Origin: Lepidodermella squamata
Lineage: Eukaryota; Animalia; Gastrotricha
Direction of reading: 5' to 3'
Assembly (NCBI GenBank): GCA_047495785.1
Contig: JBLDXI010000025.1
Location: 2,415,063-2,479,062, forward strand
Length of the DNA: 64,000 nucleotides
The position numbers and the translations under genes are program-made. Positions 1-48,371 of this stretch are shown here, piece by piece. Position 1 is the first letter of the stretch. Every line of letters starts with the position of its first letter. Under the pieces are notes generated by a model. The model ran no database searches. It had not been told where the DNA came from and saw nothing but the letters and a program-made list of their open reading frames with translations.

Positions 1-878
1 ACAGAAAAAGTCGGTTTGTATAGTAAATTCTTGCGCTTTTCAAGCATCAATTGATCTCTTTTTCCAAAAACATTATTGTAAGCAACCAAATTTATAGGAT
101 CTTCTGGGGAAGCTAGCCATAATTCTAACGGGGCAACCCTAGTGCTGCGATTTTTCATTTGATTGTAAGACGCTAAGAAAAAAGGTAAGTAATCGATGTA
201 ACGCAGCGTATGATTTGCAATTTGATGCCTCGAAATAGTTCTACGAAGCCAACGGTTGAAAATTTCTATGGGTGAACACTTGAACATGGAGGTTGTAGTG
301 TAATAATAAACATTGAATTTTTTAAATATTTTTTTAGCTTCTTTGTTGATAAATTCTCCGCCAGAATCTGTAGTGAAAGAGCGGCAACGCAAATCAGGTG
401 TTAGGCTGCTCAAAAAATTACTGATCTTCTCAGCAGTGTAATTTCCTTCTTTGTTAAGTAAGGGAATACAGAAAGCATAACGCGTAAAACAGTCTTTGAT
501 TGTAAGTAAATAGCGGGTTCCATCATTATCTTGGCTTGAATCTTGAACTTCAAGAAGATCACCTAGAAAGAGGTCACTTCTAGCATAAACTTCATATTGC
601 ATGAATTGCTTCCGGTTTCTTACACTTAGTGGTTTATATAATGAATATGTTCGATCATGGCTCATAATCTCAGCTAGTTTTTTATGAGTAAGGGAATTTC
701 TCAGCTCTAAGGGTAATGTAGCTTTAAGTGTTGAGTATAATCTGCGCAGGCCTTGAAATGATCCAACATGTTTCGGATCATTATAGAAGCTCAAAACAAA
801 CGATTTCAAGTCTGACCTGTGGTTTATTTTAGCATCTCCTTCAGCTAGACGTCTCGCATTGTGTTTATTACGTGGCAT
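1..878 (-). CDS. Polinton/Maverick retroviral-like (c-)integrase, 3'-truncated by the window edge
   Basis: Manual translation from ATG 878 is open to the window edge: MPRNKH...FYNDPKHVGSFQGLRRL...YSLYKP...DLFLGDLLE...DNDGTRYLLTIKDCFTRYAFCIPL...TTDSGGEF...KCSPIEIFNRW...YNQMKNRSTRVAP. This gives a DDE triad (GDL, TDSG, PIE) and the YxDP..GSF.G N-terminal motif of Polinton integrases. Absent from the ORF track because there is no stop in the window. Confidence 0.93.
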   Translation of the reverse strand, partial: MPRNKHNARRLAEGDAKINHRSDLKSFVLSFYNDPKHVGSFQGLRRLYSTLKATLPLELRNSLTHKKLAEIMSHDRTYSLYKPLSVRNRKQFMQYEVYARSDLFLGDLLEVQDSSQDNDGTRYLLTIKDCFTRYAFCIPLLNKEGNYTAEKISNFLSSLTPDLRCRSFTTDSGGEFINKEAKKIFKKFNVYYYTTTSMFKCSPIEIFNRWLRRTISRHQIANHTLRYIDYLPFFLASYNQMKNRSTRVAPLELWLASPEDPINLVAYNNVFGKRDQLMLEKRKNLLYKPTFS

Positions 879-881
879 GAC

Positions 882-1151
882 CTAATTCTTCTTTATAGCT
901 AATTTACGGCAAGTAGGGACAACCGAACAATTAGCCATGTGGCTAAATAAATCACCGTTTAAGTGGAATAATAAATCATTTATATTATATAACATCCGCT
1001 CAGTAGACTCGACAAGTTGCCGCAGGTGAAGGAGTTCGGCTTGAGTATTGCGAACTTCCATAACAGCGAAAAAGCTGATTAAAATGGTAACCAGGGATAG
1101 CAGCAATAGGATCGGTAAAACAGCACGCGGAATATCTGTTGTTTGATGCAT
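882..1151 (-). CDS. Small element-encoded membrane protein (one TM helix plus a heptad-like segment), unknown function
   Basis: 89 aa. Hydrophobic LPILLLLSLVTILISFFAV is followed by an amphipathic stretch. The stop codon lies 3 nt before the integrase ATG. Confidence 0.55.
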   Translation of the reverse strand: MHQTTDIPRAVLPILLLLSLVTILISFFAVMEVRNTQAELLHLRQLVESTERMLYNINDLLFHLNGDLFSHMANCSVVPTCRKLAIKKN

Positions 1152-1315
1152 AATAAATTACGAAGACTTTAAAAACGGGGAAATTTACCGATAGCCATAT
1201 TTTTATTTCTGCTGCGAATTTTGAAAATTGATAGATAATGATGAAAGTAGAAATAATGATTTTAGCTTAAAAAAAGACGGCACGCGATTAATCTTCCCTC
1301 ATTCATTAAATCATT

Positions 1316-1915
1316 TTATTGTTGTTTGATATACAGAAAAAAAGGCGCCAATTTAACAAATGCTATTTTTATAAGAGATAACGAAAAACAGCCGCTCATA
1401 ATCATTTTTCCAGTGTGAAACAGTGTGGCAGATACATTTAACTTTGGTTCATTTTCATTAGTGCTGACTTTGGAGAAAACACGTATACGCAACCCAGGAA
1501 AAAATTCTGGTTGGTAAACGCATATTTTAGGAAATTGAAAAGCTAGCAGGCTAAGATTGACAGTTTTATGTAAATCGTAGAACAATACTATATTAGTAAT
1601 TATTGGGTCACGGATTATCAACCGTCGATTAACAATTTTTCTGAGTGTAGCTTGAAGAACTCCAAAAGCAGTAACACAATTCGAGGCTGTTTTGGTACCA
1701 CTACAAATTATAGCTCCGGATGAAAATAATAAAAACGTCGCGTTAAAAGCAGGTACTTTATAGAACAAAGCACTCGACATTTTTTTTGGGTTATATTTTG
1801 CACAAGGTAAAATTAGGGCTAGACTATCTAAATTAAATAGAAAATTTGACCTTGATTTAGCCATAATATTTGAAATAGAGTAATCAATATCATATTGTAT
1901 ATTATTTACTTCCAT
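1316..1915 (-). CDS. Divergent TATA-box-binding protein (TBP) homologue encoded by the Polinton
   Basis: Both TBP core repeats are recognisable: SNIMAK..NLDSLA..AKYNPKKMSSA..TFLLFSSGAIICSGTK and TNIV..NLSLLA..YQPEFFPGL..TLFHTGKMIMSG. Canonical TBP has EYNPKRFAA, IFSSGKMVCTGAK, YEPELFPGL and IFVSGKVVLTG. Intronless. The first in-frame ATG is at 1915 and the frame is open to ~2135. Confidence 0.9.
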   Translation of the reverse strand: MEVNNIQYDIDYSISNIMAKSRSNFLFNLDSLALILPCAKYNPKKMSSALFYKVPAFNATFLLFSSGAIICSGTKTASNCVTAFGVLQATLRKIVNRRLIIRDPIITNIVLFYDLHKTVNLSLLAFQFPKICVYQPEFFPGLRIRVFSKVSTNENEPKLNVSATLFHTGKMIMSGCFSLSLIKIAFVKLAPFFLYIKQQ

Positions 1916-1998
1916 ATTTAATGGTGGGGATTTCAATAGAAAAAAAGGTTCAGTGCTAGATTGTAGCTTTAAATCAACAGGATAGGATATAGTCAAAT

Positions 1999-2427
1999 TT
2001 ATGATCGTGGTCGACTGTGATGCGGCTGATTGAAGGCTTGTAACATACTTGATTTCAGCTGTTTCTGTTTGAACTTTGCGATAGGTTGAGGGCAAATCAT
2101 GACCAAAAAAGAGGCGACAGAATCTTGCTTTCGTGACTCATGATTGGTAATTGGAACAGCTGGTTTATTTTTCGCCTTGCATGGCGTTTTCGCCGATTTA
2201 GCAACTGATTTCTTCTCAGTACCTATGACTTTTTTCTGAATTTTATGTTTAGCATTGCGTTTCGGTTGATTACGAACCGCAGTTTTTGCTAATCTAGAGG
2301 CTGATGTTTGTTCAACAGGTTCCTTGGTAAACGTACTCGTATTCGGTTCATTCAGGTTTATTGGTACGAAATCATTGTTAGAAAAAAACAATGGAGAAGC
2401 CGGAGATGAATTGAAGAAAGCTTCCAT
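1999..2427 (-). CDS. Lys-rich low-complexity ORF; possibly the N-terminal extension of the TBP-like gene via frameshift or splicing
   Basis: ATG at 2427 (MEAFFNSS...). Basic KRNAKHKIQKK..KKSVAKSAKTPCKAKNK segment. Overlaps the open TBP frame across a T6 run (2105-2110). Confidence 0.5.
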   Translation of the reverse strand: MEAFFNSSPASPLFFSNNDFVPINLNEPNTSTFTKEPVEQTSASRLAKTAVRNQPKRNAKHKIQKKVIGTEKKSVAKSAKTPCKAKNKPAVPITNHESRKQDSVASFLVMICPQPIAKFKQKQLKSSMLQAFNQPHHSRPRS

Positions 2428-2595
2428 AAATTCAGTAAGAAGAATAATATTCAAAGTTCTTGCGTTTGAAATGAAAAATGATCGAATGACGGAAGCCGGC
2501 CGCGGTGATTGGTTGGAGTTGCTGAGCCCCAGAACCTTCTGATTAGGAATGAATAAATAACAAAGGCATTATATAAATAAAATAAACTGACCAAA

Positions 2596-3402
2596 TTAGG
2601 TCGAAGAGCTGTTGTTGAAAGGTAAGACGGTAGCGACAGGTTGTAGTGCGATGGAGCGTTGCATGATGCCCGGCCATTTACTATTCGCACCTTCCTGCTG
2701 ACCATTAAGAACATCGATGACTGATGCCCATGGAATTTTCTGAGCGTGTTGATAGGGTGGAGGTACGACGTTCTGCATTTCTACTGAGACCCTACGACCT
2801 GCCCGAAGTAAAAGGTAGAATATGTGCCGCAGGTTTACGCTGACACCATTAAAGTTTTTTAACAAATCGTAAAATAAATGTTGGATGTAGATATATCGGC
2901 CTTCGGTGTAGGTAGGGTGTGCCGTTAGGCCATACCAGAAACTTTCTTCCAGGCCAGACACAATAATAGGGTTAGGGCTATCGTCGAGGCAATCATCCAA
3001 AAGGTAATCACTTTCAGTAAAAATAATTGAGTGACAAATGGACGACCATAAATCATCCTGGCGAACAAGGAGCGTGGTAGTATCATTTAGGATGCTCTTC
3101 CATAAATCATGCCCAACGATGGAAGCACAGGTAGCTAAATTATATTCGGCAAAATGTTGAAAATTCGTGCCATCGTGGGTTGATGGGAAGAGACGAGCAA
3201 CGGCTCTTTTGTAGCCGAGATAAACATGATCGATAGTAATATGTTGGCCTTTCGAGTTGGCAATCAAATCGAATATGGCGACTTCAGCGAATGTAATGCG
3301 TCCAGAGAGGGTATTTAGTGATATATTTAATGATTTCGGAGGAAAAAGTAAATCTTCTCGGTAGAAAATCGCTTCATAAGATTCATCATAGCCAATAATC
3401 AT
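2596..3402 (-). CDS. Orphan element-encoded protein, 268 aa
   Basis: Long intronless ATG-initiated ORF in AT-rich DNA, co-oriented with the integrase and TBP-like genes. No family recognised. Confidence 0.65.
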   Translation of the reverse strand: MIIGYDESYEAIFYREDLLFPPKSLNISLNTLSGRITFAEVAIFDLIANSKGQHITIDHVYLGYKRAVARLFPSTHDGTNFQHFAEYNLATCASIVGHDLWKSILNDTTTLLVRQDDLWSSICHSIIFTESDYLLDDCLDDSPNPIIVSGLEESFWYGLTAHPTYTEGRYIYIQHLFYDLLKNFNGVSVNLRHIFYLLLRAGRRVSVEMQNVVPPPYQHAQKIPWASVIDVLNGQQEGANSKWPGIMQRSIALQPVATVLPFNNSSST

Positions 3403-3478
3403 AGCAACTTATTTGACCTTGCTATCCCTACCTTAATCTTTGCTTTTATTCGATTTTCCTTGAGTAAAAAAATGTTTC

Positions 3479-3727
3479 TTATATTTTTTAGATTACAGTT
3501 AAGTTGGATTGATAGGAGAAAGTAAAGTTTATTTACAAAACAAGTTAATGGACATATCAGGAAAGAAAGGAGTATTTATAAATGCTAATGGCCAAAGTAA
3601 AAAATATTTATTATATTTTAGATTAAAGTTAAGGGGGATTGATAGGAGAAAGTAATGTTTATTTACAAAAAAGGTTAATGGAAAGTAAGGTGTATTTATA
3701 TAAGCTAATGGACAAAGCAGGAAAAAA
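3479..3727. repeat. Two imperfect ~120-130-bp direct repeats, each with a TATA box, between divergent element ORFs
   Basis: ttatattttt(t)agatta..ggattgataggagaaagtaa..tttatttacaaaa..gttaatgga..gtatttata..gctaatgg occurs twice (from ~3479 and ~3611). TATAAATG is at 3577-3584 and TATATAAG at 3697-3704. Confidence 0.85.
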
Positions 3728-3855
3728 GATGAGCTAGCTTGAGTTCTTAGATTACTGTATCTAATCAAGTATCTTTTTGGAAACTAAGAAAATTGATGGA
3801 AGCAGAAGACATGTAAGTTTGGTTCTTTTTTAAAAAATCTTGAATAAATTCTGTT

Positions 3856-4071
3856 ATGTTTAGTCGTGAACGCTTATATCAAGCACTGCTAAGCATTGAC
3901 CATCTGCAACGAGCAATGACAGCAGCTATAAACGAAATGTTGAACACACAATTGGAGGTTGAACAATTGATCAATGATGCATCACGATTTATGATAGCAA
4001 CTCGAGCAAGAGATCAGGCATGCAGCCTAGATTGTGGTGATTGGAATTGTAATTACTGTTACAAAGATTGA
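3856..4071 (+). CDS. Small element ORF with a helical body and C-terminal Cys cluster (CSLDCGDWNCNYC)
   Basis: 71 aa with ATG start. AATAAA lies just after the stop (4081). The Cys cluster is a possible Zn-binding tail. Confidence 0.5.
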   Translation: MFSRERLYQALLSIDHLQRAMTAAINEMLNTQLEVEQLINDASRFMIATRARDQACSLDCGDWNCNYCYKD

Positions 4072-4237
4072 AAAATTAAAAATAAATTATCATGTGTGCA
4101 TTTTTTATATTACAAATTAATTCCCAGAAAGAATGCAAAAGCATGACTCATAATAGTTTTAGAAAAAAAGTATGCCCGCTGTATATTTTATCATAAACAT
4201 TGCGTACATTTATGGGGCAATGGATAAAACGCACTTA

Positions 4238-4437
4238 TATATTTATGTGAAACGGTTATAGTAAAAATGACCGTAGTGCTATTACTGATACAACGCTCGT
4301 ATATTTATGCCAAATGGCTATAGTAAAAATCGCCGTACTGCCATTACTGATCCCAAATTGCGTATATTTATACCAAACGGCTATAGTAAAAATCGCCGTA
4401 CTGCCATTACTGATCCAAAGTTCCCATCCTTACTACT
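4238..4437. repeat. Polinton terminal (TIR) region: three ~62-bp tandem units ending in ACTACT
   Basis: Unit consensus gtatatttat.ccaaa.ggctatagtaaaaatcgccgtactgccattactgatcc. Units 2 and 3 are nearly identical and unit 1 is diverged. Confidence 0.9.
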
Positions 4438-5339
4438 CAAGAGTTCGCTTTCTGTCGGGCGTGCGATATTTATTAGAGGCGATAGCGCGGTCTCTTATAC
4501 GCGAAGATGACGCGCGGTGTCATGATGTCGGTCGTCAAATCACCGGAAGCGCCTGCTCTGTATTTTGCTGCCCAGTTATGTTTTCATTCATTCATTCCTT
4601 CATTTATTCATTCATCACCATCGGCGCGGGATTTCTAATCGAAAATCGCGCCAGGCCACCCACCCGCCCGGCCGCGGCCGGCAATCTAAATTCTGTGCGG
4701 CACAAACGTGGCGCGCCGGTTTGCCGGCGTTTGGCTTGTTGCCGTTTTTGTTGTTGAAACGCCTTGTTGAAACATTAATGCCAACCGCTTGACCTCATCA
4801 GTTTTTGTAGCAATATCGGTTCAGTAGGATGACACCAGGGCCGACGCTACCCGGTCTGGTTGCGATGGCGTCATTATTTTCCGACACCCGTTTTTAACTA
4901 CTATGCCCTATGTCCGGATCCGCGACGGCCGTGATTACGCCTCTAATAAATTTCAACATAGTTCATTTCGCGGCATTAGTTGATAGTATAAATAATTAGG
5001 GTCTTCACGCGCGCGCGCCTATCTCGCATGTCAATTATTACATTTCCGCACCACCATATTATCTCCGCTGCTATTGTCTCTCAACGAGTCGTCGCCGTCG
5101 ATGCGTCGCGCCCCCCGAAATAAACAATAAGCAATAAGCAACAAAGGTCGAGTGGGTTTTATAGTATCCTAGAATCTGTCGTAAATATCGGCAAATTCTT
5201 AAATTGAATAAATATTATACAAAATTGTTACTTTTCACAATCTAGAATATTTCGATGTGATTTTCTGGTTTTTTCGAATGTACGAACTGGTTTACTGTTG
5301 TCGTCGCAATCGCTCGATCATTTCTATTTACCGAGCCAA

Positions 5340-8300
5340 ATGGCGAACACGATAATCAATTACACACAAACGATGACTCGCCTATCATTCATTTTAACGC
5401 TCGTCCTTCTTCCAGGTGAGCTGATTTTTTTATTTAGGAGGATTAATAGTAATAATAATGATTAATTAAGAAAATTATTAAATTCGTCAAGAAGACTTTT
5501 CTCTCTTATTAAATTTTACCATTTTTTTCAGCTGTAACTGCGAGCGGTCATTATGCGATTTTAATTAACGGTAAAGTCCGATCAACAACCAATCCGCTGA
5601 CAATCAGCGAAGCTTTCGAGAAGGGTTTCTGTTTCGACGGCCCAACTCTATCGGTGAACGAGCCTTACGTGAAGCAATCCATGTCGACGCCATCGCCGAC
5701 CGCAGCGCCACCAGTCTACGTTTGGCGCTTTTTCGACCCGTTCGGCTCTCGCCACCTCACTTTCGAACAGCTGAACCACACGGCCGTGCACATATGCATA
5801 CGCGAACCGGTCAACATCGAAGAGTACCGCACGCATAAAATCCCTTCAATCAACTTTGGTGTTGCTGCTGCTCATCAATCAGACTCTGGCGGAGGCTACG
5901 TTACCCCTCATCTTCATTTTTTCAATCACTCAATAGCGCCGATCTGGCTGATCAATGTCAACGACGTCGCGCCTCGTTTTCTCGATTACAAAAGCGCCGG
6001 GGCTAACATATCAACAACGATCGCTCGCATCGACGAGGGTTCGTACGACTCGAAGTGCATTACAAGGTTCAGGGTGCTCGACGGTGACTTTTCTTCAATC
6101 AACGTCGAGATCAAAGTCACAATTTTATCCGTGAAACCACCCGTTGCCCCGGTTTATGTACCAGGGTCTTCCTTGCCAAGCTTCCGTGTCAACTGCAACG
6201 AGACAAAAACCGCATATGTCAGCCAGGAAGTGGTCTGCTGCCTGATTGTTTCGGGCGTGTTGGACTTTGAAGTTGTCCAGTCTTACGTTGTGGCACTGCA
6301 AGCTCAGGACGCTCGGGGCGGACCGGGCCAGTCCGGACTGACCGATTACCTCGACATTGTCGTGCTTGTTAACGACGTAGACGATGCGCCACCGGTATTT
6401 TCTCTCCCGATTTACACTGTGACGTTGCCCGAGGACGCGAAACCCTCCACCGAAGTCGTGCAATTAACGGCACGTGATGGCGACTACCTAATCAACAGCA
6501 CGCTGTTTTTCAGCATTATCAGCGTGAAAGGCAGTGAATCGCTCAAGTCTTACTTCGCCATTGACAGTAAAACCGGCCGCATCTGGCTGACAGCGGCGAT
6601 AGATCGCGAGTCGAGCGACATCCAACAGCTGCCTAACGGTGAGATACGGCTCGAAGTCGAAGCTCGGGAGATCAATAAGTCACCGCAAACAAAATCAGGC
6701 TACTCGTACAACGCGGCTTCGATTGCCACTGTCATCGTTAAAGTGGCAGACATTGACGACAACGATCCTGTTTTCTCGGCCAAAGTTTACGCCCTAACTG
6801 CAGTGTGGATTCCAGCAACTGGAAAATGGAACATAGTACCATCTGGCGACACAAGTATCCGAGTCACTGACATTGATGAAGTGCGTTCGAGTGTAGTTTG
6901 ACCATCTCATTATTTTTGGAATTTTTTAGGGTAGCAACTCGGTTTTCAAGCTCTCAATAGTTGCAAAAAATGGCCCGTCTCTGTTTAACGTGGTTCCACC
7001 GGTGGCTACTGGGACCACTTTAGTAGAACTGCTACCCACCACCAACAACACCCTGCTTCAGTCGTTGAGTGGTACAACGTGGACGGCCGAGTTGAAAGCT
7101 GAAGCTGTGTTCCCGGATGCGCGAGGTCAGCGGCGTTATTCCACGGCCGTTGTAAACATCGCCATCCAACCAGCCAACACCGAGGCACCGCGTTTCGAGA
7201 AGAAGTCCTACACCTTCGAGGTGATGGAAAATGCCGAGCAAGGCCTTTTCGTCGGAAAGATTGGCGTAATTTATTTTTTATAGATTTATTTTGAAAATTT
7301 CGAATGATGAAAATTATTACAGGCAATCGATACTGATCCTGATCGTTTCGGCGTGATTACCTACTCGATTTCGACTTCAAATATCGCTAATTCTGAGGGT
7401 GGAGCTATGCAACATCTGGCGCTACCATTCGACCTCGACCCTCTTACTGGATCCTTGACTGTCAGTGTTGGCGTTGGCCGGCAAGCTCTCGACCGCGAGA
7501 TGACATCCGAATTTCTACTTTTCGTCAGCGCCGTCGACGGCGGCGGGCTGTCTGATAGCGCTGTTGTTCGCATTAAGCTGCTCGATGTCAATGACAACGG
7601 TCCGACTTTTCTGCCCACTAGCTGCTCCGTTGCAACCGTAGCTGAAGAGACGCTAGGCGTTGTTCCCAACTGCGTTTTCCAGGTGCATGACCCTGACACG
7701 TCGCCTAACAACGACTCGGTGGTCCAGATCACAAGTGTCGACCTGTTGCTAAACGTTGCGTCGACCAGCGAAATTCCTGACCAACCACCGGCTGCTAAAC
7801 TAGCTTTTCTCACGAAAGACAAATTTCGGCTCAATCGCCATTTCGATAATTCGGGCAGCGCCAAGTGGGTGCTGCAACTTGTCAGTAGCGTCGACGTCGA
7901 TAAGGTACCAACTGTTAACTTTCTTGTTTTATTCAAGTTTTTGCTTTATTATTTTCCAGCTTCGGAGCCATTTGCCAAACGGGGCGAGTGGAGGGGTTAC
8001 TGTCATCATTGGACTGCGTGCCGAGGACGCGAATGCCGCCTACCACCAGACGTCATTCTATTCCGATACAACTCTGCGTTTGACTTTTACGGACATTAAT
8101 GACAACGCGCCCGAGTGTTACTCGACCAACGCAGTCGATGCATCGCGCAACTACGGCGGCATGTACTTTGAGGTGTACGAAAACGCAACTATCAGCGATT
8201 CATTGGCGCAAATTTCGGCGAGTGACAACGACGAGCCGTACACAGTCAACTCGCGGATCGTTTACAGCTGGAGCGCGTCCGAAATGCTTATTGGAAATTT

Positions 8301-11300
8301 TATCACATACCAGCAAAACCCTTTCAGCTTGAATCCTGAAACCGGCGAACTGCGCCTGTCACCGGGCCACTCGCTCGACAAAGACATCGTTGGCATGTAT
8401 AACCTATCGGTCAGACTCCAGGATCTTGGAAATCCACCTCAAAACACAACATGCCAAGTTGTTGTCAAAATTCTGGATGTCAACAACAAACCGCCCAAGT
8501 TTATCCCGTCTGCTGTTAAATATGTCTCTGTCAGCGAAAATTCATCGCCTGAGAAATTCCTCGCAGTCATGTCTGCGGAAGATCCGGATATCGATGCTAA
8601 TCTTGAATACATTTTACTTACTGACCTAGTTTCGGCCGAATTCGGGCCACATTGGGTGGAAGCGTCGACTAGCCCGGCGCCGAGAAATTCGTCGTCAATG
8701 TTGACATTAGGCGAGTATCAAAACGACAGCTTGTACTCGCCTGTGCCGGGCAGCTCGACATCACCCCTTCTCACCTCACCGCCGCCCCTTTCGACAGCTT
8801 CGACGTCGCCTCAGTTGTCTAGCTTGGTTCAGAAACTGTTCTTAGTCGACAAACGCAACGGTTTTGTTCGGCTTCTGGATAAACTGGACCGCGAGCAGTT
8901 GCATGCGATTAAACTTCCGATTTTAGTCCGCGATCTGAATGCAGTTTCGCAAGCGCAAACCGCGACTGGCACCCTTGTGATTCAAGTTACCGACGTCAAC
9001 GATGCGACACCGCAATTCGACCGCGCTGATAGTTACTATCATTTCGAGGTAATTTTACTGCCTTTTAGCACTGATTTTGAGGACATCAATACTGAACTTA
9101 ATCTTGTTGTTCAGCGTACTTGAATTCTAAAATTAATCAAAATAATGATGAAATGTGAATCTATCGCTAAACATTGCTTAGTAAACATGTTTCAGACGGA
9201 AATCAGTGCACGTGTACCCAACTCTTAGATGAAAGATGAGATCTGTAATGGAGACAAGAGACAATGCAACTTCAAGATTTAAGCCTAACTTTTTTGGTTT
9301 TCAGGTCTCGGAGTCCGCTCCTATTTCGAGCCGAATCGGCGCTGTCAAGTGCATTGATGCAGACAGTGACGATGCGACTTACATCGAAGTGGAGCCGTGG
9401 GGCGATCGGCATCTCATCGACGTGACGCCGATAGGCGATGTGTTCACGAAGCAGTTGCTCGACTTTGAAACGCAGCGCCAGCTAAACGTCACCGTGACTT
9501 GCACGGACCGGGCTGGGCACCGAGCTCGGGCCATCGTCGCAGTGTCTCTGCTCGATGAAAACGACTGCGTACCAGCGTTCACTTCCGCACCAGACTACGC
9601 CACCGTGGCTGAGCTGGCTCCTCATGGTGAGCTGGTCGCAGAAATGCGGGCTACTGACTGCGATACTGGCGAGTACGGTCGCCTTAACTACTTTATCGTT
9701 GGCGGTAACGAAAAGGGCCACTTCGCCATCAACACTTACACTGGCGCTGTCACTGTTAACGGAATATTAGACGCGGAGACTGTCGACAATTATGAACTGA
9801 CCCTGTTAGTTAGGGACAATCCACTAGCAGCTCTGGCGAACCAGACAAACTCGGCTACGAAGCGTCTGCTGATTGCTGTGAAAGACATAAATGACTGCGT
9901 TCCAACCTTCGGCAAAGCCTCAGTTGCGCTTGGTGATATAGATATTTCAGCTCTCATCCCAGGCTTCCAACTCGTCGAACTGCCGCTTGCTAAGGATTGT
10001 GATAGAAGCATCAACAACTCGGCAATCACGTACTCTATTGATATGAACCTATACCCTGGGCCTCGTTTATTCGACATCGATCCTTCGACGGGGCGGGTCA
10101 GTGTGTCTGCCAAGGCATCGCCTAACGACTTCGAGAAAGTCGCAAACAGTCTTTACCATTTCGCTATCAAAGCCTCAGACCATGGCCTACCCGAACCACT
10201 CAGCAGCATTGCGACAGTTTCGCTGGTCATCAAGAAGGGTCAAACCTCTACTCCCTTCGTGTATACTGAAAAATCGCTTAGACCTTCAAACTCGCCGAAA
10301 TCGCTAGATCATACTGTTGCTATCGAAAGCTCGGGCGAATTAAATTTCCAGGTTAAGGAGGAATGGTCTGGTTGTTTTGGTACTCTCAAGTTGAAGCCGG
10401 AATTCATCAGTTGTTGCCACGACCTTCAATTCGACATTCTGAACTCGAAATACAACAGCTACATAGTTGCGAAGCAAATTAACGATAAAGTTGAGTTGTG
10501 TCTGCAGAAGCCAATCGACCACGAGGCCGCGATTTCTCAGCAGAATTCGTCCAAGGTGATTTTCCCGTTCACGTTGTCTATCCACGGTGCTAACTGCAAC
10601 CTCACGGCTTCGCGTTGTCTATCCGAGACGCCTTTCACCGTGGAAGTGCTCGATATCAATGACAACGCGCCTGTTTTCGAGAAACGCGAGCTTACAGTTC
10701 GAGCCCTTAGCCCTATCATTCGTGATGGCGATGTGATTGCGGATTTACGGGATTACCTGACTGATCGCGATTTCGATGCCGATTTCACAGCTGTCCGCTA
10801 TCGCATGTCGCCCCATGATAGCGTGAACAACCAGTTATCGGCTTTCCGGCGGTTTTTCGCGTTCAATGAAACATCCGGAGTTATCACTGTCTTGCCTGGC
10901 GACTTGCGTGCGCCTCTTTCACTCGCCAACCCAGCGAGCCCTATCCGGGTGACAATTTCGGCCTGGGACAATTCGACAATTAGGAAAAATGTAGAATCCA
11001 CAGTTCTCATTACGGTAAATTTTGTTGCTCTTATGATCTATGAGCATTTTAAGAATTGATTTTATAGATTCCGATTGTCACTAATTTGTCAAACTTGCTC
11101 GATATAATCGTTCGATACCCGACTGCGACATTTGACGAGAACTATCTATCGCGATATTTGCCTGAGAATGAAGACGACAGACTGTACGCAAGCCGATTTG
11201 TCCAGGCACTAAACGACGCGCTATCTACTGTAGAAGACATGGCACCTCTGCAAGTAGTCGAAGCAGGTCCTACTCTGCGGTTCGGTCCAAAATTCGCCGA

Positions 11301-14300
11301 CTCTGATTTGTGAGTTCCGTCCATCAATTTGAGCTTTGCTCTAGTATTATTGTTTTTATTAGATTGCACGTGATTGTTCACGAAGCGGAGAATCCTAAGC
11401 GTGTGACAAGTTTCAAGAGGACAGTTCCAAACGCCGATTTCGATAACAATGCTGACTCTTTGCGGAAATCGCTTTACAGAGCTTACCGCAGCTCTGATTC
11501 GATGAAAGACGTTTATGTGAGATTTGTCGTCATTCAACTCCAGGTAATTAATTTCAACTTCAAAAATCTCTTCTGATGAATTATTTTTCGTCGTAGCCAT
11601 TGCCATTGCTTTCGCAAAATTCAACGACTGGCCCTGATGCAATGTCAGCCGTGTTGCTGAACCTGACGATAACAGTGCCTGGCTCATCACCTGTCGACTT
11701 GATTCGAGTCGAAGAGCGCGTGTCTGCCGTCAAGCAGGAGGCAGCGTCGAGCGACGAGACTTTCACTACGTATATGTCATGGGCTTTCCTGTCGATCGTC
11801 ATCGTTTCGTTCCTGACCATGTCGATCTTGATCCTCGTCGCCGCCTTCATCGTATTCAGGCAAAAGTACGCAAAAGAGGCAGCCGAGCACTGCGCTAGTA
11901 GGCAATGCAACGCTAGCAGCTCGTCCACCGGCTGCGACTACGATAGGCCTATAGCCGTCGTCAGTGACGCAAAATTCACATGACCCGAATATTTTCGAGA
12001 AAATTTATTCAAAAAAATCTTTAAAAAATAGAGCCATTTATTTTCAAATATTTGTGCTATAAACTATGAAATTATTGTTGTTTAATAATATTATATGTTT
12101 CCTCTTCTCCTATTTTCCTTGCGATCGCCGCAGGTACCACCGAAAGATGCGTGCCCTCGAAATCCTTCTCACAGCTGGTTAGTTGTCGATGCTTAGCAAA
12201 TCGACGTTGTTTCGTTTTTTTGTTAAAAAATCATATATATCCGCGCGTTTTCGTCGTCATCTCGGTTGTGTGCATGCTTTGCGGCATCTACGCACTTTAA
12301 TTCGAATTCAATCGTTCTTCCATCACTGTTTTGTTTCGTCGTCCGTTTTTTGCTTTGGTGCTTTTTAGTTCTATCATATTATTGCAAAGTAGAGCGAATC
12401 ATTTATTGCGCATTCTCATTGTCTTATAATTTCTTCACCTTGTCTTATCACCACGTGGCCGTACAGATTCGGCGAATCGCCATCACCAGCCCAAAGCCGG
12501 CGGTACGACAACAATCATGAGCGGAGGCCCGAGCAGTCTGCGCGAGACGCAACACGGCAACACGGCCGCCTTCTTCGACTCGCGCACCCTGCCAGCCGAA
12601 AGCGCGGCGACTAAAATCACGAACGGCAACAAAGATCCGGGCCACTTTTACAAGAACAACGCCGTATCACTGACACGTGTTCACTATTCACGGGCGAGCG
12701 GTTTACCGGGTCCGGTCAACACGCCAAGCAGTAGTAACAATAACAGTAATCACAGCGAAGAAGCCCCACTGAAAAGTAGTAATAACGGCGGCCTGCTTGA
12801 CAAGTAAGCGCACATGTCTTTTTCACGCATTATCGTTTTTTTCCGGAAAAATAACCCGAGTGTCGCTTGATTTTTCGCACTTGAAACCGCCTAACCCCAC
12901 AGCAAATTTGATTTATTTTCATGTGTTGTTGCTATTATTATTATCTTTCGGGGAATGAATTTACAGTGTGATTTACCACCACATCAAACCGCCCGCCCCG
13001 CCGCCGCCGGGTGGGCTGAGTCACCGTTTTGGTGGCGCGCGGCGTTTCCTGGTCATCAGACGGCGAAAGACCGCGATCGGTCAAATCGAGCGTGACGATG
13101 ACCTGGCGGAGTTGACGGCCTCAGCTTCGGCTGCGGTGCCGCCGTCAACAGCCGGGGCATCGCCATCGCCGAAAAAGGTTCGCTTCGCCCTTCCGGCCCG
13201 CAGCAGCCGATGTGACACGCCGAGCGAAACAGTCAGTAAAAACACCGGCTGTCTCGAAATTTGATAGGTAGCCAAAAATTAGAAGACGCGGGTTTGAACC
13301 GGGGAATAGATTATAACTTTTCTTATACTAGGCTGTTTTGTTTGCTTTGGTATTCATTCCTATACTTTCTTTTGTTTCGCCTTTCTTTAACGCCCGCGAA
13401 GAAATCCGATAATGGTGGCACCGGCGCCGGTTGTGAGGCGCTACCAGCCGCGAACGTCGGCGGGTACGGCCTTCGTCAAGGCGCTGCGCTCGGGCCGCCT
13501 CTCGGTGATAACGCCGGCGAGCAGCAGTGGCACTGACGAAGCGCTCGTGCCGACGGCGAATAATAACATCATTCGCAGCTCCGGCAGCGCCGTGTCACCG
13601 TCGTCCGTCGCTGCCGCCAGCAAACCTGCCGGCAGCATCGTCGAGTTCGAACAGGCCGATATCATATTCCAGCAGCGAAAATAACAAAATACCTATAATC
13701 ACACAATAAAGAGTAAAGAAGCGTTATTACCTATCGTTGTTGGGTAAACTATGGATAAAACGTACCAGTAGAACACGCACGGTTCATGAGATCACCCGCA
13801 TGAAATGGTTGCACCGAATTTATCCTGTTAACTCACCGCACTTAAATGCATTTTTCTTTTAGCTTGCACTAATACTAACTTGATTGAAATGAAACAATGG
13901 TTTCGGGAGTTTGAAGGCGCTTGCCTGTGGTTTCTCTGATATTATATATTCTAGCGGTGTAGAATGATAGATTTTGTGTTATATTCGAGTGGTTAATTTG
14001 TGTTTTCTACTCGCAGCTTCCGCACGAATATTTTCTCCACATTCTTTCGGCCGATCGCAGCCCAGCCGTCGCAGCTGGGCGCCGACTCTTATCGGCACGC
14101 AAACAGACAACAGCAGCAGCAGAGACAGCGTGGCGATGACGACGCGGACAGCCGAGCAACAGCAGCAGCAGATGATGATGGCGTTCGCGAGCAACCTGAC
14201 GAGTCTAAACCCCGGCGTCTTTTCACCTTCGGCGGCGATGATGGCGCTGGAGGAGGAGTCGCTGTCGGGCCCGGACGCGCAGCTGGCGCTCGTCGCGCAA

Positions 14301-15130
14301 ATGGCGCAGTACAGCGACGCGCGACCGCCGGCGCCGTCTACACCGGCGAGGTGCCCAAGTTCATCGCGAGCCTGGTCGCCAGCCAGCAGTCGGGCTCCAA
14401 CGCCAGCCTCGACGCCCCGATCGCCCCCAGCGGCAGCACCGGCGACGAGGGCTTCGCGTCGTTCACCAGCCTGCCGCCGCCCGACGGGCAACAGCGGCGC
14501 AGCCAGCAGCGCCTGCTCTCGAACAGCCTCGACGGCCGCAGCCTGGCGGTGGCGCCTCACGAGTCGCAACAGCAACAGCAGCAGCAGCAGCAGCAGTCCG
14601 CGGTCGTGGTGCCAGCGTTTGGCCGCCGGGCTTCTGCTCCAGCGGCCGAGAACGTGTACGACGCCGACGCCGACGACGATGTGGCCGCCTCCATCGCCTA
14701 CGAAAACGGCGCCGCCGCCGACGGATCCGACCAGTACTGCCCCATCGAGACATATGCCAAGTTTCCGTTTATAGACTCCACCGTGTCGTCCAGCTTCAAC
14801 AACATCACCGGCTGCAACTCGAGTAGCTTCTCGCCCTTCCGCCCGCAGGTTACCCGCGGCGCCCACCACTTCTCGGCTGATAACGGCGGCGGCTGTCGGC
14901 GCCAGCGCACGCCAACCGGTTTCGTCTACAACGTCGACATTCACTACCGGCAACCGTCTCCGGCGCACAGCGACTCGACGGCGAGACACGACGACCGGTT
15001 GCAGTTGGCGGCGCAGAGTTTCATGCCGGCTCCTGTTGATGACGACGAGCGAGTGGACGCGTCACCCCATGGCTTCCCTTCATCCCCGCCGTCACCATCA
15101 CTCGCTCTCGTTTCTGCAACTCTGCTCTGA
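5340..15130 (+). CDS. Large non-classical cadherin (~13 EC repeats, single TM; CDH23/PCDH15/Cad87A-like architecture), multi-exon
   Basis: Signal-peptide exon 5340-5415. Further exons: 5532-6880, 6930-7265, 7323-7904, 7960-9048, 9305-11014, 11068-11309, 11363-11516, 11597-11865, 12134-12177, 12467-12803, plus alternative last exons. All join in frame at GT-AG sites. Repeated DxNDxxP, LDRE/LDFE and AxDxD motifs. TM segment WAFLSIVIVSFLTMSILILVAAFIVF. Confidence 0.93.
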
Positions 15131-17972: not shown

Positions 17973-19268
17973 TTGACCACACACATTGCCTCTGATGAAG
18001 ATATTGTTCTGCTCGTACTAGAGAGCACTATTTTTGTAGAAAACAATCGCCTATAATAAGCATCAGAAAAATTTAAGACCGGGTAAATGCGCTTTTTTTG
18101 ATTTAGCGGCGCGCAGTTTGAAATGCGGTGGCACTATTATTAGTGGTGTCTTTTTTGCGGCTAGACGCGCTGGGGCCCGATGGGAAAGGCGCGTGTTATC
18201 AGCGCGTGCATAATACGCGATTTATTGCCGGCTGTATACTAATAAGCAGTTGTTGGCTTTCACAGGCAGGCAAATCGATACAATAGATGATCGCAGCGAG
18301 TGTAACTTGTCGCCGCATGACCTGAAATTTCGGCGGGGTGCGGCCATAAAACACGCCGTTATAGGCTTGCGTGTGGTCACTGGTCAAGCTTGACATGAAA
18401 TATTTAAATAGCGTGAATGTTTTGTTTGTGAACATCATTATCGCAGCAGGCTTTTCTAAACAAATTCAGTCATCATAGTAAAAAGCGGTCAGTTTTTGAA
18501 ATAACTGCAGACAAATAATTTGTTCCGAAAAAGCGCGCACCCGATCCATTCATCAGCATGTACGACGGTAATCGAATTTTTCAAGGCGGCTCAAGCGGAA
18601 CGCCCTTGGAAATGGAAAAAAGCGTCTCGAGAGCTAGCAACCGTGCGATCGGCTCTAATGTACTATGCTGCCCGTACTTGAATTCATTCCGAATAAGGAA
18701 GTCTGTTGTGGTCCTCTGGTCAGCAAAACACGATCTGGCACCATCGAAAATAGTGCGCGTAAAATATTGCCGCGGGAAGGAAATTGAACGCGCGCTAAAA
18801 GGTGCGGTTGACCTAAAAACCACACAGCCCTTTGTTTTCTGTATTTTAGAGTAGGTAGCTCCGTTGCGTGAGCGGGCACTTCTAACTTCTTAATGGGCGT
18901 TTCTGTCACTCTTAATGGCTCTGAGATGAAATACAGAAAATAGCGTAATTAATTTTCCGTAAGATCAAAGAGTGTCAAGGCAATAAATAGGTGAGCAGCG
19001 ACTATTTAGCGCATTTCAATTACTTTTTTATTCCGTCCTAAAAATGCAAGAATCATCGAAACGTCATAATATACCGTAAATTGGGGCAAAATGGCCGCGG
19101 GAAAAAAATGACCCCCTGTTTTTTTCGCATTTTTACACGTTTCAGAGGGTCCTGATTCCGATTTTATAGGAAGCTCATTTTGCCCCAGGTTTGGGGCAAA
19201 TTGGACAGGTGTTTTGGGGCTAATTGGCCACCCTTATCCTTATAATGGGTTTTTAATATTTGATGATT

Positions 19269-19364
19269 GTGAGGGTTGAATGGTCGAGTGGTTGTGATGC
19301 GTCATCAGAACTTGAGTGATCTGATGAGCGACGGTTCGAATCCTCATAAAGTAGCATTTTTTTT
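19269..19364 (+). ncRNA. tRNA-derived Pol III-type cassette (A box, B box, T8 terminator); not a canonical tRNA
   Basis: A box TGGTCGAGTGG at 19281-19291 and B box GGTTCGAATCC at 19333-19343. A stem CGTCATCAGA/TCTGATGAGCG lies between them. T8 at 19357-19364. Confidence 0.55.
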
Positions 19365-19571
19365 GCTACGCATTTAATTTTTTAATTTTTTGGTTTCAAT
19401 TGTCCATTTTACTAATAATTTTTAATTAGTTTCTCCGTTTTTTCTGATAGTTTTACTGCTGAGCAACTTTTAAACGCCTCCCGAACAAAAGAAATGCCCG
19501 GGATACGTGGTGTTAGTAGAATAATTAAAATGGAAAATTAACAGAAAAAATTAAAAAATTAAATGCGTAGC

Positions 19572-19669
19572 AAAAAAAATGCTACTTTATGAGGATTCGA
19601 ACCGTCGCTCATCAGATCACTCGCAAGCTCTGATGACGCATCACAACCACTCGACCATTCAACCCTCAC
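19572..19669 (-). ncRNA. Inverted second copy of the tRNA-derived Pol III-type cassette
   Basis: Reverse-complement B box ggattcgaacc at 19593-19603, A box ccactcgacca at 19647-19657 and A8 at 19572-19579. Confidence 0.55.
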
Positions 19670-21650
19670 AATCATCAAATATTAAAAACCCATTATAAGG
19701 ATAAGGGTGGCCAATTAGCCCCCATCATTGAGTTTTCCATGGGGTAATTTGGCCACAATCACCTAGCCATACCTGTGCATCGCCTGGGGTCGCGGTTTTT
19801 TTTGCTGTCATCTACGACGAAAATGGTCGAAGGAAAAAATTTCATCTGAACATCAAACCTCGTGATTGGCTCCAGGTAATTCAATTTAGAGGAGTCGTTT
19901 TTACCTCCCCAAACTCACCTTTAAACAACAACATGCTGTGACCTCATTCCGGGACATACCTGGCTGAAAATTTACAGGCTTGTAAAAGGCTTGTTGATAA
20001 TCGTCCCCGTAAATTTTTGTGAAGTTTTATCTTGTAGTTTTTGAGCTATCGATAAAAATGTGAAAACCTCAATTTTTGGCCAATTAGCCCCAAAGGTTCA
20101 TTTTGCCCCAAATGACGGTATACTGAAACATAACGCAGCCGCGCTATTTCCTGTCGAAAGGTTGGATGCGCGTGTCTCCGGTGCGATTTCTCAGACTTGA
20201 TAAATGATTCTGAATAGAAGGAAGTATGCAGAAATTGCCGAGAAGCTGACTTATTATTATATAGAAAAATAGCCCTAATAAAACGCGTTAACTACTTAAT
20301 TGCAAAATAATATTGCGATTTTCTCACACTATAGCAACTAAATAGAAAAGAGCACTGGCGCTTTAAACTGTCTAGTGCTTTCAACAGCGTCGAGCATAAA
20401 AACTTGAAAAGGCATCATCATTTCTCGTATCGCTTTACTCTTCCGGCTATATACTCTTCGAATATGTGTTACAGAAAGTGTCTATAACTTCGACTGAAAG
20501 CCCATCATCCGTTGAAAAACCTTGCGCATATCGCCTTGAACAGTGAGCCAGCCTCAGCGCAACGTAAATGCCAAAAAACAACAAGCTATTATAAAGAGAG
20601 TATTTTATTCAAAATAAATAAATATTTTTTCACACGCTGAAAGGTTTTTCGAAGAAACCAAATTATACGAGATGTTGGGCGAGGAGCATCATGACGAGCG
20701 CAAAAAACTAGCCGCGATTAAGATGCGCTTTTTGCGGTTGTAGGTTATAATGCAACAGGGTGGCGATATAACGAGCCGCCTCGAAGAGCGCGCGCACCGC
20801 AAATACACTGAATTGAATAAAAAAAAGCAATATTCGCTACCGAGTTGCGCTAATCAAATCTCTTGAGTCATGAAAAAACATCAGCCGTCATCAAGCCGGG
20901 CCGCAGAAAAAACACGGCGTGCGCAATAAAACTTGAAACAAGGTAATAATACGCTAGACAAGCTATAGCATTGCGGTAGTAAAAGGGTTGCAGGCTTACG
21001 CCGGAAAAAATGACGGCATGAAACTCTGAAGTGGAGACATCTTATTATGAAGATCCTACTCACTTGTCATGAATGTATCATTTTCTCAGAAAGAGGTTTC
21101 AGTCTGACAACGAGTCGATTTTTTTCTTGTACAAGAGCGTGCTGAACAACGGCTTGGTCAAGACGGTAACATTTTTGGGCAATATCATATTGTCTGAGTG
21201 GTATAAAATGAACCACTCGTGGCGAAAATTCTATCTAGGCTAAATCTTGATTCCTCTTTATAGCCCGAAATCACAATAATCTATGTTGTTTTTACATGAT
21301 TGAGTGCCGTCATAAAACTTTGGTATATTCGATAACATATAGGCAAGTGCAATGAGCGGGTCTTCCATAACAATAACGATCGGGGGTGGTCAATATAACC
21401 TATGCTTTGTTTTTCGGCAAAAAATTGTTTTATATTCCCTCCCACACATCTGTCGCCCGCAACGGCGCCCGCAACGGCTATAACATGCGATAATATATGA
21501 AATGCGCCTTTGGGCCAAGCTTCCGTCCGCAGAATAAGTTTTATTGCTCGATTAGTATACAAACTCGCATAGATGATGTGAGTAAATAAAAATAAAACCT
21601 GATAGCAGATGCATGAAATCTTGATTTGAGAGATAAAACTATATCCTGCG

Positions 21651-47161: not shown

Positions 47162-48277
47162 CTTCGGGGGCAGGTGTCTTTTCCGAATGTAACTATCTAC
47201 TCTGGTTCAAGTTGCAAGTCCCCGCTATCCAGGTCTTGTTAAATTTCAAGTCGGCCAAACGATGTATTCAGTATTTTGGACGTCAAATGAGTCAAACAAG
47301 CTGTTAAGCACAATATTTTAAAACACCCGAGTAGTAGAAAAAGCGGGAAACAGGCACCTACTCAACACGCTAAGTTTGTCTGTCTAAATGGGCGATTTTA
47401 TTAGTATTATTTATTGTAAAACAAACACATGTGTTGTAGCAGTGATACTAATATTTTTTACGCAACTTCGTATACGCGTTATATTCTTTCATTCCTTTGT
47501 TGTTGCTTTGTTCTGTTGTCGCCACGGTTCAAGAATGCACGTACGCGCCAGGGCTCTAAGAGCGTTGTCGCTTTCAAGCTCTGAGCAATTGAAACTTTTG
47601 GCTGGCATAGTGAGCTCGCGTTGTAAATCTTACTCACGTTCAAAACAACATTCGCCTGCTTTTCTTTTCCGCACCAACATCAGCGATGTAGGATTATAGT
47701 TTACATTTCCAACATAGACACATCCACGCATTGTGTTTTTTTCAACAATTTTAACAATGGTGGTTTTGTTATAGTTGCCTGCGCTTTGTTCTCACCACGA
47801 AGCCGAGATAACGCCACAAATTTAAATTATGTCAACGTTTTATATCTATGAGACCGAATTACTAAGGATACAGCACATCCGCTGGGTACTGAGAGCATGT
47901 ATTGCGAAGTCACGACGACTTTCAAAGAGATGTTTGAACAATCTTGGCGGCTCGGTCCGTTGCACACAGACAATTGCTACATTTTGTATCTAATGGGATT
48001 TGGCCGTGATTTATTAACATGCCGATAATTACGTTTCGTGATGAGTTATACCTACGTCATAAAAGTCATTAGGAACTTTTGACACGTATCTAATTTACTG
48101 CTCCCGACAATTTACTCGATGATTCATCCCTTTATAATGAAGCTCGTGGTTGTACTGGAGTACCCGAAAATGAAGTCAGAATTCATCATCGAAAATACTC
48201 TACAGGCCTTATATTGGAAGACTTATTGTCTCATTTCACAAGAGGAGTCCAGGATGTTTTGAGATATTTTAACTCGA

Positions 48278-48371
48278 TGAAAATGAAAAATGAATGAATA
48301 TTCATTCATGAAAATGAATAAATTCATGAAAATTCATGAAAATGAATAAATGATGAAAATGAATAAATTCT
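48278..48371. repeat. AT-rich minisatellite (ATGAAAATGAATAAATTC-like); mirrored at ~63195-63289
   Basis: Visible tandem atgaaaatgaa(t)aaa units. Confidence 0.8.

What the first reader, a model, noticed from the sequence alone, without database searches (positions are those of the whole stretch)
1..4437. A Polinton/Maverick that encodes its own TATA-binding protein
Seen: AGTAGT terminus, TIR repeats, c-integrase and, two ORFs upstream of it, an intronless gene with both TBP core repeats. Known: TBP homologues occur in giant viruses (NCLDV), but TBP is not a core Polinton gene (pPolB, integrase, ATPase, protease, major/minor capsid), and I know of no described animal Maverick carrying one. Inference: the element may redirect host Pol II to its own promoters or antagonise host TBP, which would be an element-specific transcription system. 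This is the best candidate for a novel system in the window.
Basis: partly seen in the sequence, partly recalled or inferred. Interest (0 to 1): 0.92.

Follow-up and report, generated by a model that had tools for sequence, protein, structure and literature searches.

The report
Integrase-bearing virus-like element encoding its own TBP
The last 4.4 kb of an AT-rich, integrase-carrying virus-like DNA element, inserted in an animal genome, holds an intact but very divergent copy of the TATA-binding protein, which suggests the element brings its own transcription start factor; whether it is truly a Maverick/Polinton cannot be settled from this window.

Summary
The TBP observation is real. ORF 1319-1915 (minus strand, 199 aa) matches Pfam TBP at 85 bits with both repeats. 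AlphaFold gives pLDDT 94, and the model fits solved TBP cores at TM 0.80-0.83. It keeps every family column that is at least 90% conserved, both saddle Asn residues and 3 of the 4 DNA-kinking Phe. It is only 25-37% identical to any TBP among 1.84 billion representatives, and its codon use is foreign to the host (GC3 25% against 53-55%). It is therefore not a recent host retrocopy.

It lies between a DDE (rve) integrase ORF, cut by the window edge, and a terminus at 4437. That terminus starts with AG, repeats a trinucleotide, carries three 62-63-nt subterminal repeats and coincides with a sharp GC step.

Maverick identity is plausible but unproven. No pPolB, ATPase, capsid or protease gene, no second terminus and no target-site duplication are visible. 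The integrase and the other ORFs have no detectable close relatives.

Sister copies were not retrieved because of an operator bar. The function is inferred only.

The parts
1..878 (-). Integrase ORF, N-terminal 292 codons; continues beyond the left edge of the window
   Evidence: PF00665 rve 26.2 bits, E 9.9e-6, residues 116-194. PHROG 4410/4646/8463 transposase-type hits. Candidate catalytic D, D, E visible in the translation. No PDB or word-search relatives.
882..1151 (-). 89-aa ORF with one strongly hydrophobic N-terminal segment (small membrane protein?)
   Evidence: ORF list. Peak 19-residue hydropathy 2.74 at residue 12. No Pfam or PHROG hit.
1316..1915 (-). TBP-like gene, minimal ATG model: 199 aa, core only. 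Repeat 1 is about 1634-1882 and repeat 2 about 1322-1603. The open frame continues upstream to 2095.
1999..2454 (-). Basic ORF: 151 aa from TTG, 142 aa from the first ATG, pI 10.4. Its 3' end overlaps the upstream open part of the TBP frame, in another frame.
   Evidence: No family hit above noise.
2596..3402 (-). 268-aa acidic ORF of unknown function
   Evidence: No Pfam or PHROG hit and no homologues. Single-sequence AF2 model unusable, pLDDT 34.
3403..3855 (.). Very AT-rich divergent intergenic region (GC 26-32%) with two 84-nt direct repeats (3469-3552 and 3599-3682, 85% alike). An A/T-only TATA-like octamer follows each repeat copy on the minus strand (starts 3580 and 3700).
3856..4071 (+). 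71-aa ORF on the opposite strand with a Cys-rich C-terminus
   Evidence: No family hit above noise.
4236..4422 (.). Three tandem 62-63-nt subterminal repeats (76-94% alike), each with an A/T-only TATA-like octamer
   Evidence: TRF period 63, 2.9 copies, score 259. Repeat family D1. Octamer positions.
4423..4437 (-). Inferred terminus of the element. Read on the minus strand it starts AG, with a trinucleotide given twice.
   Evidence: Sequence. GC step at 4400-4500. The boundary is not verified by a second end or an empty site.
4438..4443 (.).
   Evidence: Sequence only. The other end is not in the window.

Best explanation
Window 1-4437 is one arm of an integrated, AT-rich, virus-like DNA element in an animal genome. 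The element is most likely of the Maverick/Polinton (adintovirus-like) kind. Its genes are read inward from the terminus, on the minus strand.

One of them is an intact, core-only TATA-binding protein paralogue. It diverged long ago from cellular TBPs but keeps the saddle fold and most DNA-contact residues.

Most likely mechanism (inferred): the protein binds A/T-only TATA-like boxes. The element carries these in or beside its repeat units: one after each copy of the 84-nt repeat upstream of the 268-aa gene, and one in each of the three subterminal repeats. Through its conserved C-terminal stirrup the protein would nucleate a host Pol II pre-initiation complex on the element's own promoters. 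That would give the element a transcription start factor independent of host TBP.

Shown here: the fold, residue conservation, intact ORFs, position inside the element, and foreign codon use. Inferred: expression, DNA binding, use of host TFIIB and Pol II, and the Maverick identity.
For: TBP homology and fold:
- Pfam 85 bits, two repeats.
- PDB TBPs at E 4e-19 to 3e-9.
- AF2 pLDDT 94, pTM 0.86.
- Foldseek TMq 0.80-0.83 to human, yeast and plant TBP cores.

Constraint on the protein:
- The query keeps 17 of 17 columns that are at least 90% conserved, and 21 of 27 that are at least 80% conserved, across 149 relatives.
- It keeps both saddle Asn and 3 of the 4 conserved Phe columns. The role of the four Phe is taken from PMC12209930.
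- The C-stirrup residues E137, F139, P140 and G141 are kept.

Not a host retrocopy:
- The best of 1.84 billion representatives is 29-37% identical, and none reaches E<1e-30.
- GC3 is 25% against 53-55% in host exons.

Part of an element:
- It lies between the integrase ORF and the terminus, in uniformly AT-rich DNA with a sharp GC step at the end.
- All long ORFs are on one strand, and all exceed the longest ORF in 500 shuffles.

Candidate target sites: TATA-like octamers in or beside the repeat units.

Precedents:
- A TBP gene is labelled on MELD-virus maps (PMC8502044).
- Herpesviral TBP mimics direct host Pol II to viral late promoters (abstracts of PMC7498053 and PMC12529657).
Against: - No hallmark Maverick gene, second terminus or target-site duplication is visible.
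- The integrase match is below Pfam's gathering score and has no detectable close relatives.
- No sister copy was examined, so selection (dN/dS) is untested. The exact proteins are absent from the 15-billion-protein collection.
- The first-stirrup Phe column is not kept and lies next to a one-residue insertion. Five other columns that are at least 80% conserved also differ. DNA specificity, or binding itself, may therefore differ.
- The TATA-like octamers are not enriched beyond what the repeats themselves contribute in very AT-rich DNA.
- The contig has a fold-back-like duplication at its other end, so an assembly chimera at the junction is not excluded.
Confidence: 0.45

Rival explanations
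1. Decoy or antagonist. The protein does not start transcription at element promoters. Instead it competes with host TBP for TATA boxes, or titrates host partners such as TFIIB, TFIIA or NC2-type factors, and so damps or reshapes host transcription.
For: The fold and the C-terminal stirrup are conserved. The N-terminal stirrup, which is the TFIIA side by established TBP structural knowledge, is altered: the Phe column is lost and there is a one-residue insertion. The protein is core-only, with no N-terminal regulatory domain in the ATG model.
Against: Three of the four Phe and both Asn are kept, as expected for a productive DNA binder. The element has TATA-like boxes of its own near its genes. 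Nothing here tests partner binding.
Confidence: 0.12
2. Terminal-repeat architectural protein. The TBP-like saddle binds and bends the TATA-like boxes that recur once per 62-63-nt subterminal repeat. It would serve genome-end functions (replication start or integration complex) rather than transcription.
For: One A/T-only TATA-like octamer sits in each of the three subterminal repeats, in phase. The terminus repeats a trinucleotide. By general knowledge, such reiteration is typical of protein-primed linear replicons, whose ends bind accessory DNA-bending factors.
Against: No TBP homologue is known to act this way. Similar boxes also lie in the internal promoter-like region. The DNA is AT-rich, so such octamers are cheap.
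Confidence: 0.08
3. Passenger gene without a role for the element. A TBP paralogue was captured long ago from some eukaryote and is carried along, and this copy is intact only because the insertion is young.
For: No sister copies were examined, so selection is untested. Maverick-like and MELD elements are known to pick up host-derived genes (PMC8502044).
Against: Identity of about 28% combined with 17 of 17 invariant columns kept is the pattern of long evolution under constraint, not of neutral drift. Its codon use matches the element's AT bias, and exceeds it.
Confidence: 0.15
4. Not a Maverick/Polinton. The arm belongs to another kind of integrase-bearing element or endogenised DNA virus, or the junction at 4437 is an assembly join. 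TBP would then be a gene of that other entity.
For: Hallmark genes are not seen. The integrase is weak (26 bits) and lacks an N-terminal Zn-finger-like Cys/His pattern in the visible part. No ORF has recognisable Maverick or adintovirus relatives. TBP homologues are otherwise typical of giant viruses. The contig shows a fold-back-like duplication.
Against: The AG terminus, the terminal repeats, small one-strand genes and an rve integrase reading inward near one end all fit Polinton anatomy (Kapitonov and Jurka 2006, Pritham et al. 2007; from my own knowledge). The TBP is structurally nearer to cellular TBPs than to giant-virus TBPs. The gene order is not that of an LTR retroelement.
Confidence: 0.2

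Closest known systems
Polinton/Maverick elements and adintoviruses of animals
   Same: rve integrase near one end reading inward, 5'-AG terminus, subterminal repeats, a string of small genes on one strand, integrated in an animal genome.
   Different: Hallmark genes (pPolB, ATPase, capsids, protease) are not visible. The integrase and accessory ORFs have no detectable relatives. TBP is not among the accessory genes that the main text of PMC8502044 (section 3.2) describes for animal adintoviruses.
[quoted passage not shown] 2021, Fig. 5 legend)
   Same: A mid-size element with Polinton-type genes and a TBP homologue. This is the only literature precedent I found.
   Different: That figure belongs to the paper's section on non-animal datasets. 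The figure itself is not held, so I could not see which element carries the gene. No sequence comparison was made, and no function has been studied.
TBP homologues of giant viruses (Nucleocytoviricota)
   Same: Virus-encoded, divergent proteins with the TBP fold.
   Different: They fit less well (TMq 0.57-0.74, 10-21% identity) than cellular TBPs (TMq 0.80-0.83, 25-27%). By general knowledge they act with the virus's own RNA polymerase. An element of this size has no room for one.
Beta- and gamma-herpesvirus TBP mimics (KSHV ORF24, HCMV UL87, EBV BcRF1)
   Same: This is what it would work like: a nuclear DNA virus factor that recognises a TATA-type box in viral promoters and brings in host Pol II (abstracts of PMC7498053 and PMC12529657).
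   Different: The mimics are large proteins with no sequence similarity to TBP. The protein here is a bona fide PF00352 TBP with both repeats. The only herpesvirus hit in BFVD was weak (TMq 0.51).
Cellular TBP paralogues (TRF1, TRF2/TLF, TRF3) and divergent protist TBPs such as Giardia TBP
   Same: Promoter-selective or divergent TBP-fold proteins. The protein here is core-only and very divergent, like the protist ones.
   Different: It keeps 3 of the 4 kinking Phe, whereas Giardia TBP keeps 1 of 4. It is encoded in a mobile element with foreign codon use. No specific affinity to any paralogue could be shown, because no named TRF2 sequence was available.

Membership tests
TBP family (PF00352) | Two tandem TBP repeats detectable by profile | tested here: met
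   85.2 bits against a cut-off of 22.9, in 2 stretches. Archaeal TBP models of NCBIfam score 50-70 bits, far below their cut-offs, so it is not an archaeal-type TBP.
TBP family (PF00352) | Saddle fold with pseudo-dyad (strand-helix pattern repeated twice) | tested here: met
   AF2 pLDDT 94, pTM 0.86. Foldseek against 44 TBP chains: E<=5e-11, TMq up to 0.83, rmsd 1.7-2.4 A. The MSA was made of TBPs, which favours this fold.
TBP family (PF00352) | DNA-contact residues: four kinking Phe and two saddle Asn | tested here: inconclusive
   Both Asn and 3 of the 4 Phe columns are kept. The first-stirrup Phe column (88% F in the family) is Ser, next to a one-residue insertion. Assigning these columns to the kinking Phe rests on PMC12209930 and on my knowledge of TBP structures.
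TBP family (PF00352) | Binding of TATA DNA, TFIIB and TFIIA | not testable with these tools
   Only conservation of the C-stirrup residues E137, F139, P140 and G141 could be shown.
Polinton/Maverick (adintovirus-like) | Protein-primed family B DNA polymerase | not testable with these tools
   It would lie beyond the left edge of the window. Retrieval of the adjoining DNA was left out (operator bar).
Polinton/Maverick (adintovirus-like) | Retrovirus-like (rve, DDE) integrase | tested here: met
   PF00665 E 1e-5 (26.2 bits, below the gathering score of 32.6; the ORF is cut by the window edge). PHROG transposases at 1e-8 to 7e-5. A D, D, E triad is visible. Membership of the Maverick-type 'c-integrase' clade was not tested, as no comparator was available.
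Polinton/Maverick (adintovirus-like) | Jelly-roll major and minor capsid proteins, FtsK-type packaging ATPase, adenain-like protease | tested here: inconclusive
   None of the five other visible ORFs matches such families. These genes may lie in the unseen part.
Polinton/Maverick (adintovirus-like) | Terminal inverted repeats | tested here: inconclusive
   One terminus with three tandem subterminal repeats is seen. No inverted partner lies within the window.
Polinton/Maverick (adintovirus-like) | 6-bp target-site duplication | not testable with these tools
   Needs the other end or an empty site.
Polinton/Maverick (adintovirus-like) | Termini beginning 5'-AG | tested here: met
   The minus-strand reading from 4437 starts AG. 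The criterion comes from Kapitonov and Jurka 2006, from my own knowledge.
Giant-virus TBP homologues | Closest relatives are giant-virus TBPs | tested here: not met
   BFVD best TMq 0.57-0.74 at 10-21% identity, against PDB cellular TBPs at TMq 0.80-0.83 and 25-27%.
Recent host TBP retrocopy | High identity to animal TBP cores and host-like codon use | tested here: not met
   25-27% identity to human TBP cores. No relative above 37%. GC3 25% against host 53-55%.

The most novel reading that the evidence does not exclude
A lineage of animal Mavericks (adintovirus-like elements) runs an element-specific transcription programme. Its own bona fide TBP reads TATA-like boxes built into the element's promoter and terminal repeat units, and recruits host Pol II. 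This would be the first small nuclear dsDNA element of animals with a true TBP-fold initiation factor. It would be functionally parallel to the herpesvirus late-gene TBP mimics but derived from cellular TBP.
Probability: 0.3. Interest if true: 0.75.

Novelty: new variant of a known kind. Interest (0 to 1): 0.58.

Why it matters
Virus-encoded TBP homologues are known from giant viruses, which bring their own polymerase, and functional mimics are known from herpesviruses. A true two-repeat TBP in a 15-20-kb-class, integrase-bearing element of an animal would show that even small endogenous virus-like elements can carry a general transcription factor.

It would also offer a natural, very divergent TBP for studying which saddle and stirrup features are indispensable. 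This one keeps all invariant columns but has lost one kinking Phe.

The interest is tempered in three ways. The Maverick identity is unproven in this window. A TBP gene has already been drawn on MELD-virus maps. Nothing about expression is known.

Tried and rejected
Searches that found nothing useful:
- Word-indexed homologue searches: TBP gave one weak hit; the integrase and the 268-aa ORF gave none.
- Exact look-ups of ten TBP-related and element proteins or host ORFs found none in the collection. This also means a look-up of encoding contigs could not have worked.
- PDB phmmer with the integrase found nothing.
- AF2 on the 268-aa ORF without an alignment gave pLDDT 34, so no fold search was run with it.
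- PHROGs for the small ORFs found nothing.
- Rfam and tRNA scans of the window found nothing.
- BLASTP of TBP repeat 1 against repeat 2 found no detectable similarity; the repeats are very asymmetric.
- A search of the rest of the window for another copy of the element or its proteins found none.
- The octamer census shows that TATA-like octamers recur only through the repeat units, so I make no enrichment claim beyond that.

Readings rejected:
- Recent host retrocopy, on identity and codon use.
- Archaeal contaminant: NCBIfam scores are far below the cut-offs, and the gene is embedded next to animal genes.
- LTR retroelement, on gene order.
- Human contig: the host genes have long single exons, and there is a SAM synthetase ORF of 233 aa.

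Not attempted: a labelled phylogeny, because the representative library has no names.


Full report
1. WHAT IS THERE

Window 1-4437 is a compositionally distinct block. Its GC is 35-38%, against 43-52% in the following 60 kb. GC steps from about 30-36% to 48-54% between 4400 and 4500.

All long open frames lie on the minus strand: 293, 273, 270 and 189 codons. The longest open frame in 500 shuffles of the block was 171 codons. These frames are therefore intact coding regions, not chance.

Read on the minus strand from 4437 inward, the block contains:
- A terminus that starts AG and gives a trinucleotide twice.
- Three tandem 62-63-nt repeats, 4236-4422.
- A 71-aa ORF on the other strand, 3856-4071.
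- A very AT-rich region with two 84-nt direct repeats, 3469-3682.
- A 268-aa ORF, 2596-3402.
- A basic 151-aa ORF, 1999-2454.
- The TBP frame, 1316-2095, with its first ATG at 1915.
- An 89-aa ORF with a hydrophobic N-terminal segment, 882-1151.
- An integrase ORF that starts at 878 and runs off the left edge of the window.

2. THE TBP GENE IS REAL

Sequence evidence:
- Pfam PF00352 scores 85.2 bits (cut-off 22.9) in two stretches.
- phmmer against PDB returns 35 TBP sequences, archaeal at 4e-19 and eukaryotic at about 1e-11 to 1e-9. The matches cover both repeats.

Structure evidence:
- With an alignment of 149 relatives (A1), AlphaFold gives pLDDT 94 and pTM 0.86. The strand-helix pattern is repeated twice.
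- Foldseek places the model on human, yeast, plant and microsporidian TBP cores at TMq 0.80-0.83, rmsd 1.7-2.4 A and 25-27% identity.

Residue conservation:
- The protein keeps all 17 columns that are at least 90% conserved among the relatives, and 21 of 27 that are at least 80% conserved.
- It keeps both saddle Asn (N16, N108) and three of the four family-conserved Phe columns (F64, F139, F166).
- The fourth Phe column, in the first stirrup, is Ser next to a one-residue insertion.
- That these four Phe kink the DNA is taken from PMC12209930 and from general knowledge of TBP structures.
- The C-terminal stirrup keeps E137, F139, P140 and G141. By established TBP-TFIIB structures this is the TFIIB side.

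The two repeats are no longer similar to each other by BLASTP.

3. IT IS NOT A RECENT HOST COPY

- HMMER read 1.84 billion representative proteins and found 1125 relatives. None scored better than 2e-20, and none was more than 37% identical.
- The word-indexed search found one hit at 30%.
- The protein scores 50-70 bits against archaeal TBP models whose cut-offs are 181-347 bits.
- Giant-virus TBPs fit less well than cellular ones: TMq 0.57-0.74 at 10-21% identity.
- Animal TBP cores are highly conserved (general knowledge), so 25-27% identity to human TBP rules out a young retrocopy.
- GC3 is 25% for the TBP gene and 31-42% for the other element ORFs, against 53-55% for host exons.

Very low overall identity combined with full retention of the invariant columns points to long evolution under constraint. 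This is indirect evidence, and the relatives were selected by similarity to the query.

4. THE ELEMENT

The integrase:
- The ORF matches rve at E 1e-5. The 26.2 bits are below Pfam's gathering score, and the ORF is truncated by the window edge.
- It matches three PHROG transposase-type families.
- Candidate catalytic D, D and E are visible with integrase-like spacing.
- It has no PDB or word-search relatives.

The rest of the anatomy:
- The AG terminus, subterminal repeats, inward-reading integrase and small one-strand genes fit Polinton/Maverick anatomy as described by Kapitonov and Jurka 2006 and Pritham et al. 2007 (my own knowledge).
- None of the defining genes (pPolB, ATPase, capsids, protease) is in the visible 4.4 kb.
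- No inverted partner of the terminus is in the window, and the 6-bp duplication cannot be checked.
- No second copy of the element or its proteins lies in the rest of the window.

I put the Maverick/adintovirus-like identity at about 0.6-0.7.

5. THE HOST

The flank encodes cadherin repeats, MetRS, SAM synthetase (best PDB match mammalian MAT2A, 305 bits), a rhodopsin-type GPCR, CBF/Mak21 and prominin-like ORFs. The exons are long. This is an animal, probably an invertebrate. It is not human-like. The species was not identified.

6. ARE ANY GENES BROKEN?

Within the visible part, neither gene that has relatives to compare with (TBP, integrase) shows an internal stop or frameshift.

Two pairs of neighbouring ORFs could conceivably be parts of longer genes.
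- If the basic ORF and the TBP frame were one gene, they would differ by one change of frame. That could be an intron or one frameshift.
- If the 89-aa ORF and the integrase were one gene, they would be separated by one stop.

My best reading is four separate genes and no break. I give no places beyond the ORF bounds.

No tool here predicts an intron and no relatives show one. Each ORF was searched apart.

7. HOW IT MOST LIKELY WORKS (INFERRED)

An A/T-only TATA-like octamer follows each copy of the 84-nt repeat upstream of the 268-aa gene, and one lies in each of the three subterminal repeats.

The simplest reading is that the element's basic (pI 9.7), saddle-shaped protein binds these boxes and recruits host TFIIB and Pol II. 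This would parallel the role of the herpesvirus TBP mimics (abstracts of PMC7498053 and PMC12529657).

The rivals are listed with their weights in the Rival explanations section:
- a decoy for host factors;
- a terminal-repeat architectural protein;
- a passenger gene;
- a non-Maverick element or an assembly join.

8. NOVELTY

In the searchable library, the only link between Polinton-type elements and TBP is the legend of Fig. 5 in Starrett et al. 2021. [quoted passage not shown] The figure belongs to the paper's section on non-animal datasets.

That paper's account of accessory genes in animal adintoviruses does not mention TBP. Other searches found nothing.

The finding is therefore a new variant of a known kind, not a new category.

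I therefore made no look-up, pattern scan or accession fetch for sister copies, for the adjoining contig, for related Maverick or adintovirus loci, or for the genomic context of the nearest TBP-like proteins (their sources are unknown).

Consequently dN/dS, the second terminus and the hallmark genes remain untested.

The residue statements above rest on the column counts.
- Also in my reasoning, I worked out how the two neighbouring ORF pairs abut, including an approximate place for a possible splice. I do not repeat these here.

Noticed in passing
47577-55354 and 56210-63990: A 7.78-kb inverted duplication, 99.92% identical (1 mismatch, 5 gap openings), with an 855-nt spacer. Each arm holds a pair of prominin-like ORFs. 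The right arm ends 10 nt from the window end. It looks like a fold-back assembly artefact or a very recent inverted duplication.
   Followed up: partly
19216-19722: Nested short inverted repeats with arms of 99-101 nt, 89-99% complementary; hairpin- or MITE-like.
   Followed up: no
5654-11059: A run of long cadherin-repeat ORFs on the plus strand. The element's end lies about 1.2 kb upstream of the first, so the insertion may sit in that gene's upstream region.
   Followed up: partly
13974-15130: Long overlapping ORFs on both strands (266-376 aa) in GC-rich DNA with no Pfam match. Nature unknown.
   Followed up: partly
23602-24920: Two abutting minus-strand ORFs that together cover a methionyl-tRNA synthetase catalytic domain. 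A SAM synthetase ORF lies nearby at 26504-27208.
   Followed up: no
1916 and 2428 (minus strand): The TBP ORF and the basic ORF share the same 8-nt context around their first ATG. This is possibly chance.
   Followed up: no
4583-4615: A (TTCA)8 microsatellite in the host flank, just outside the element.
   Followed up: no
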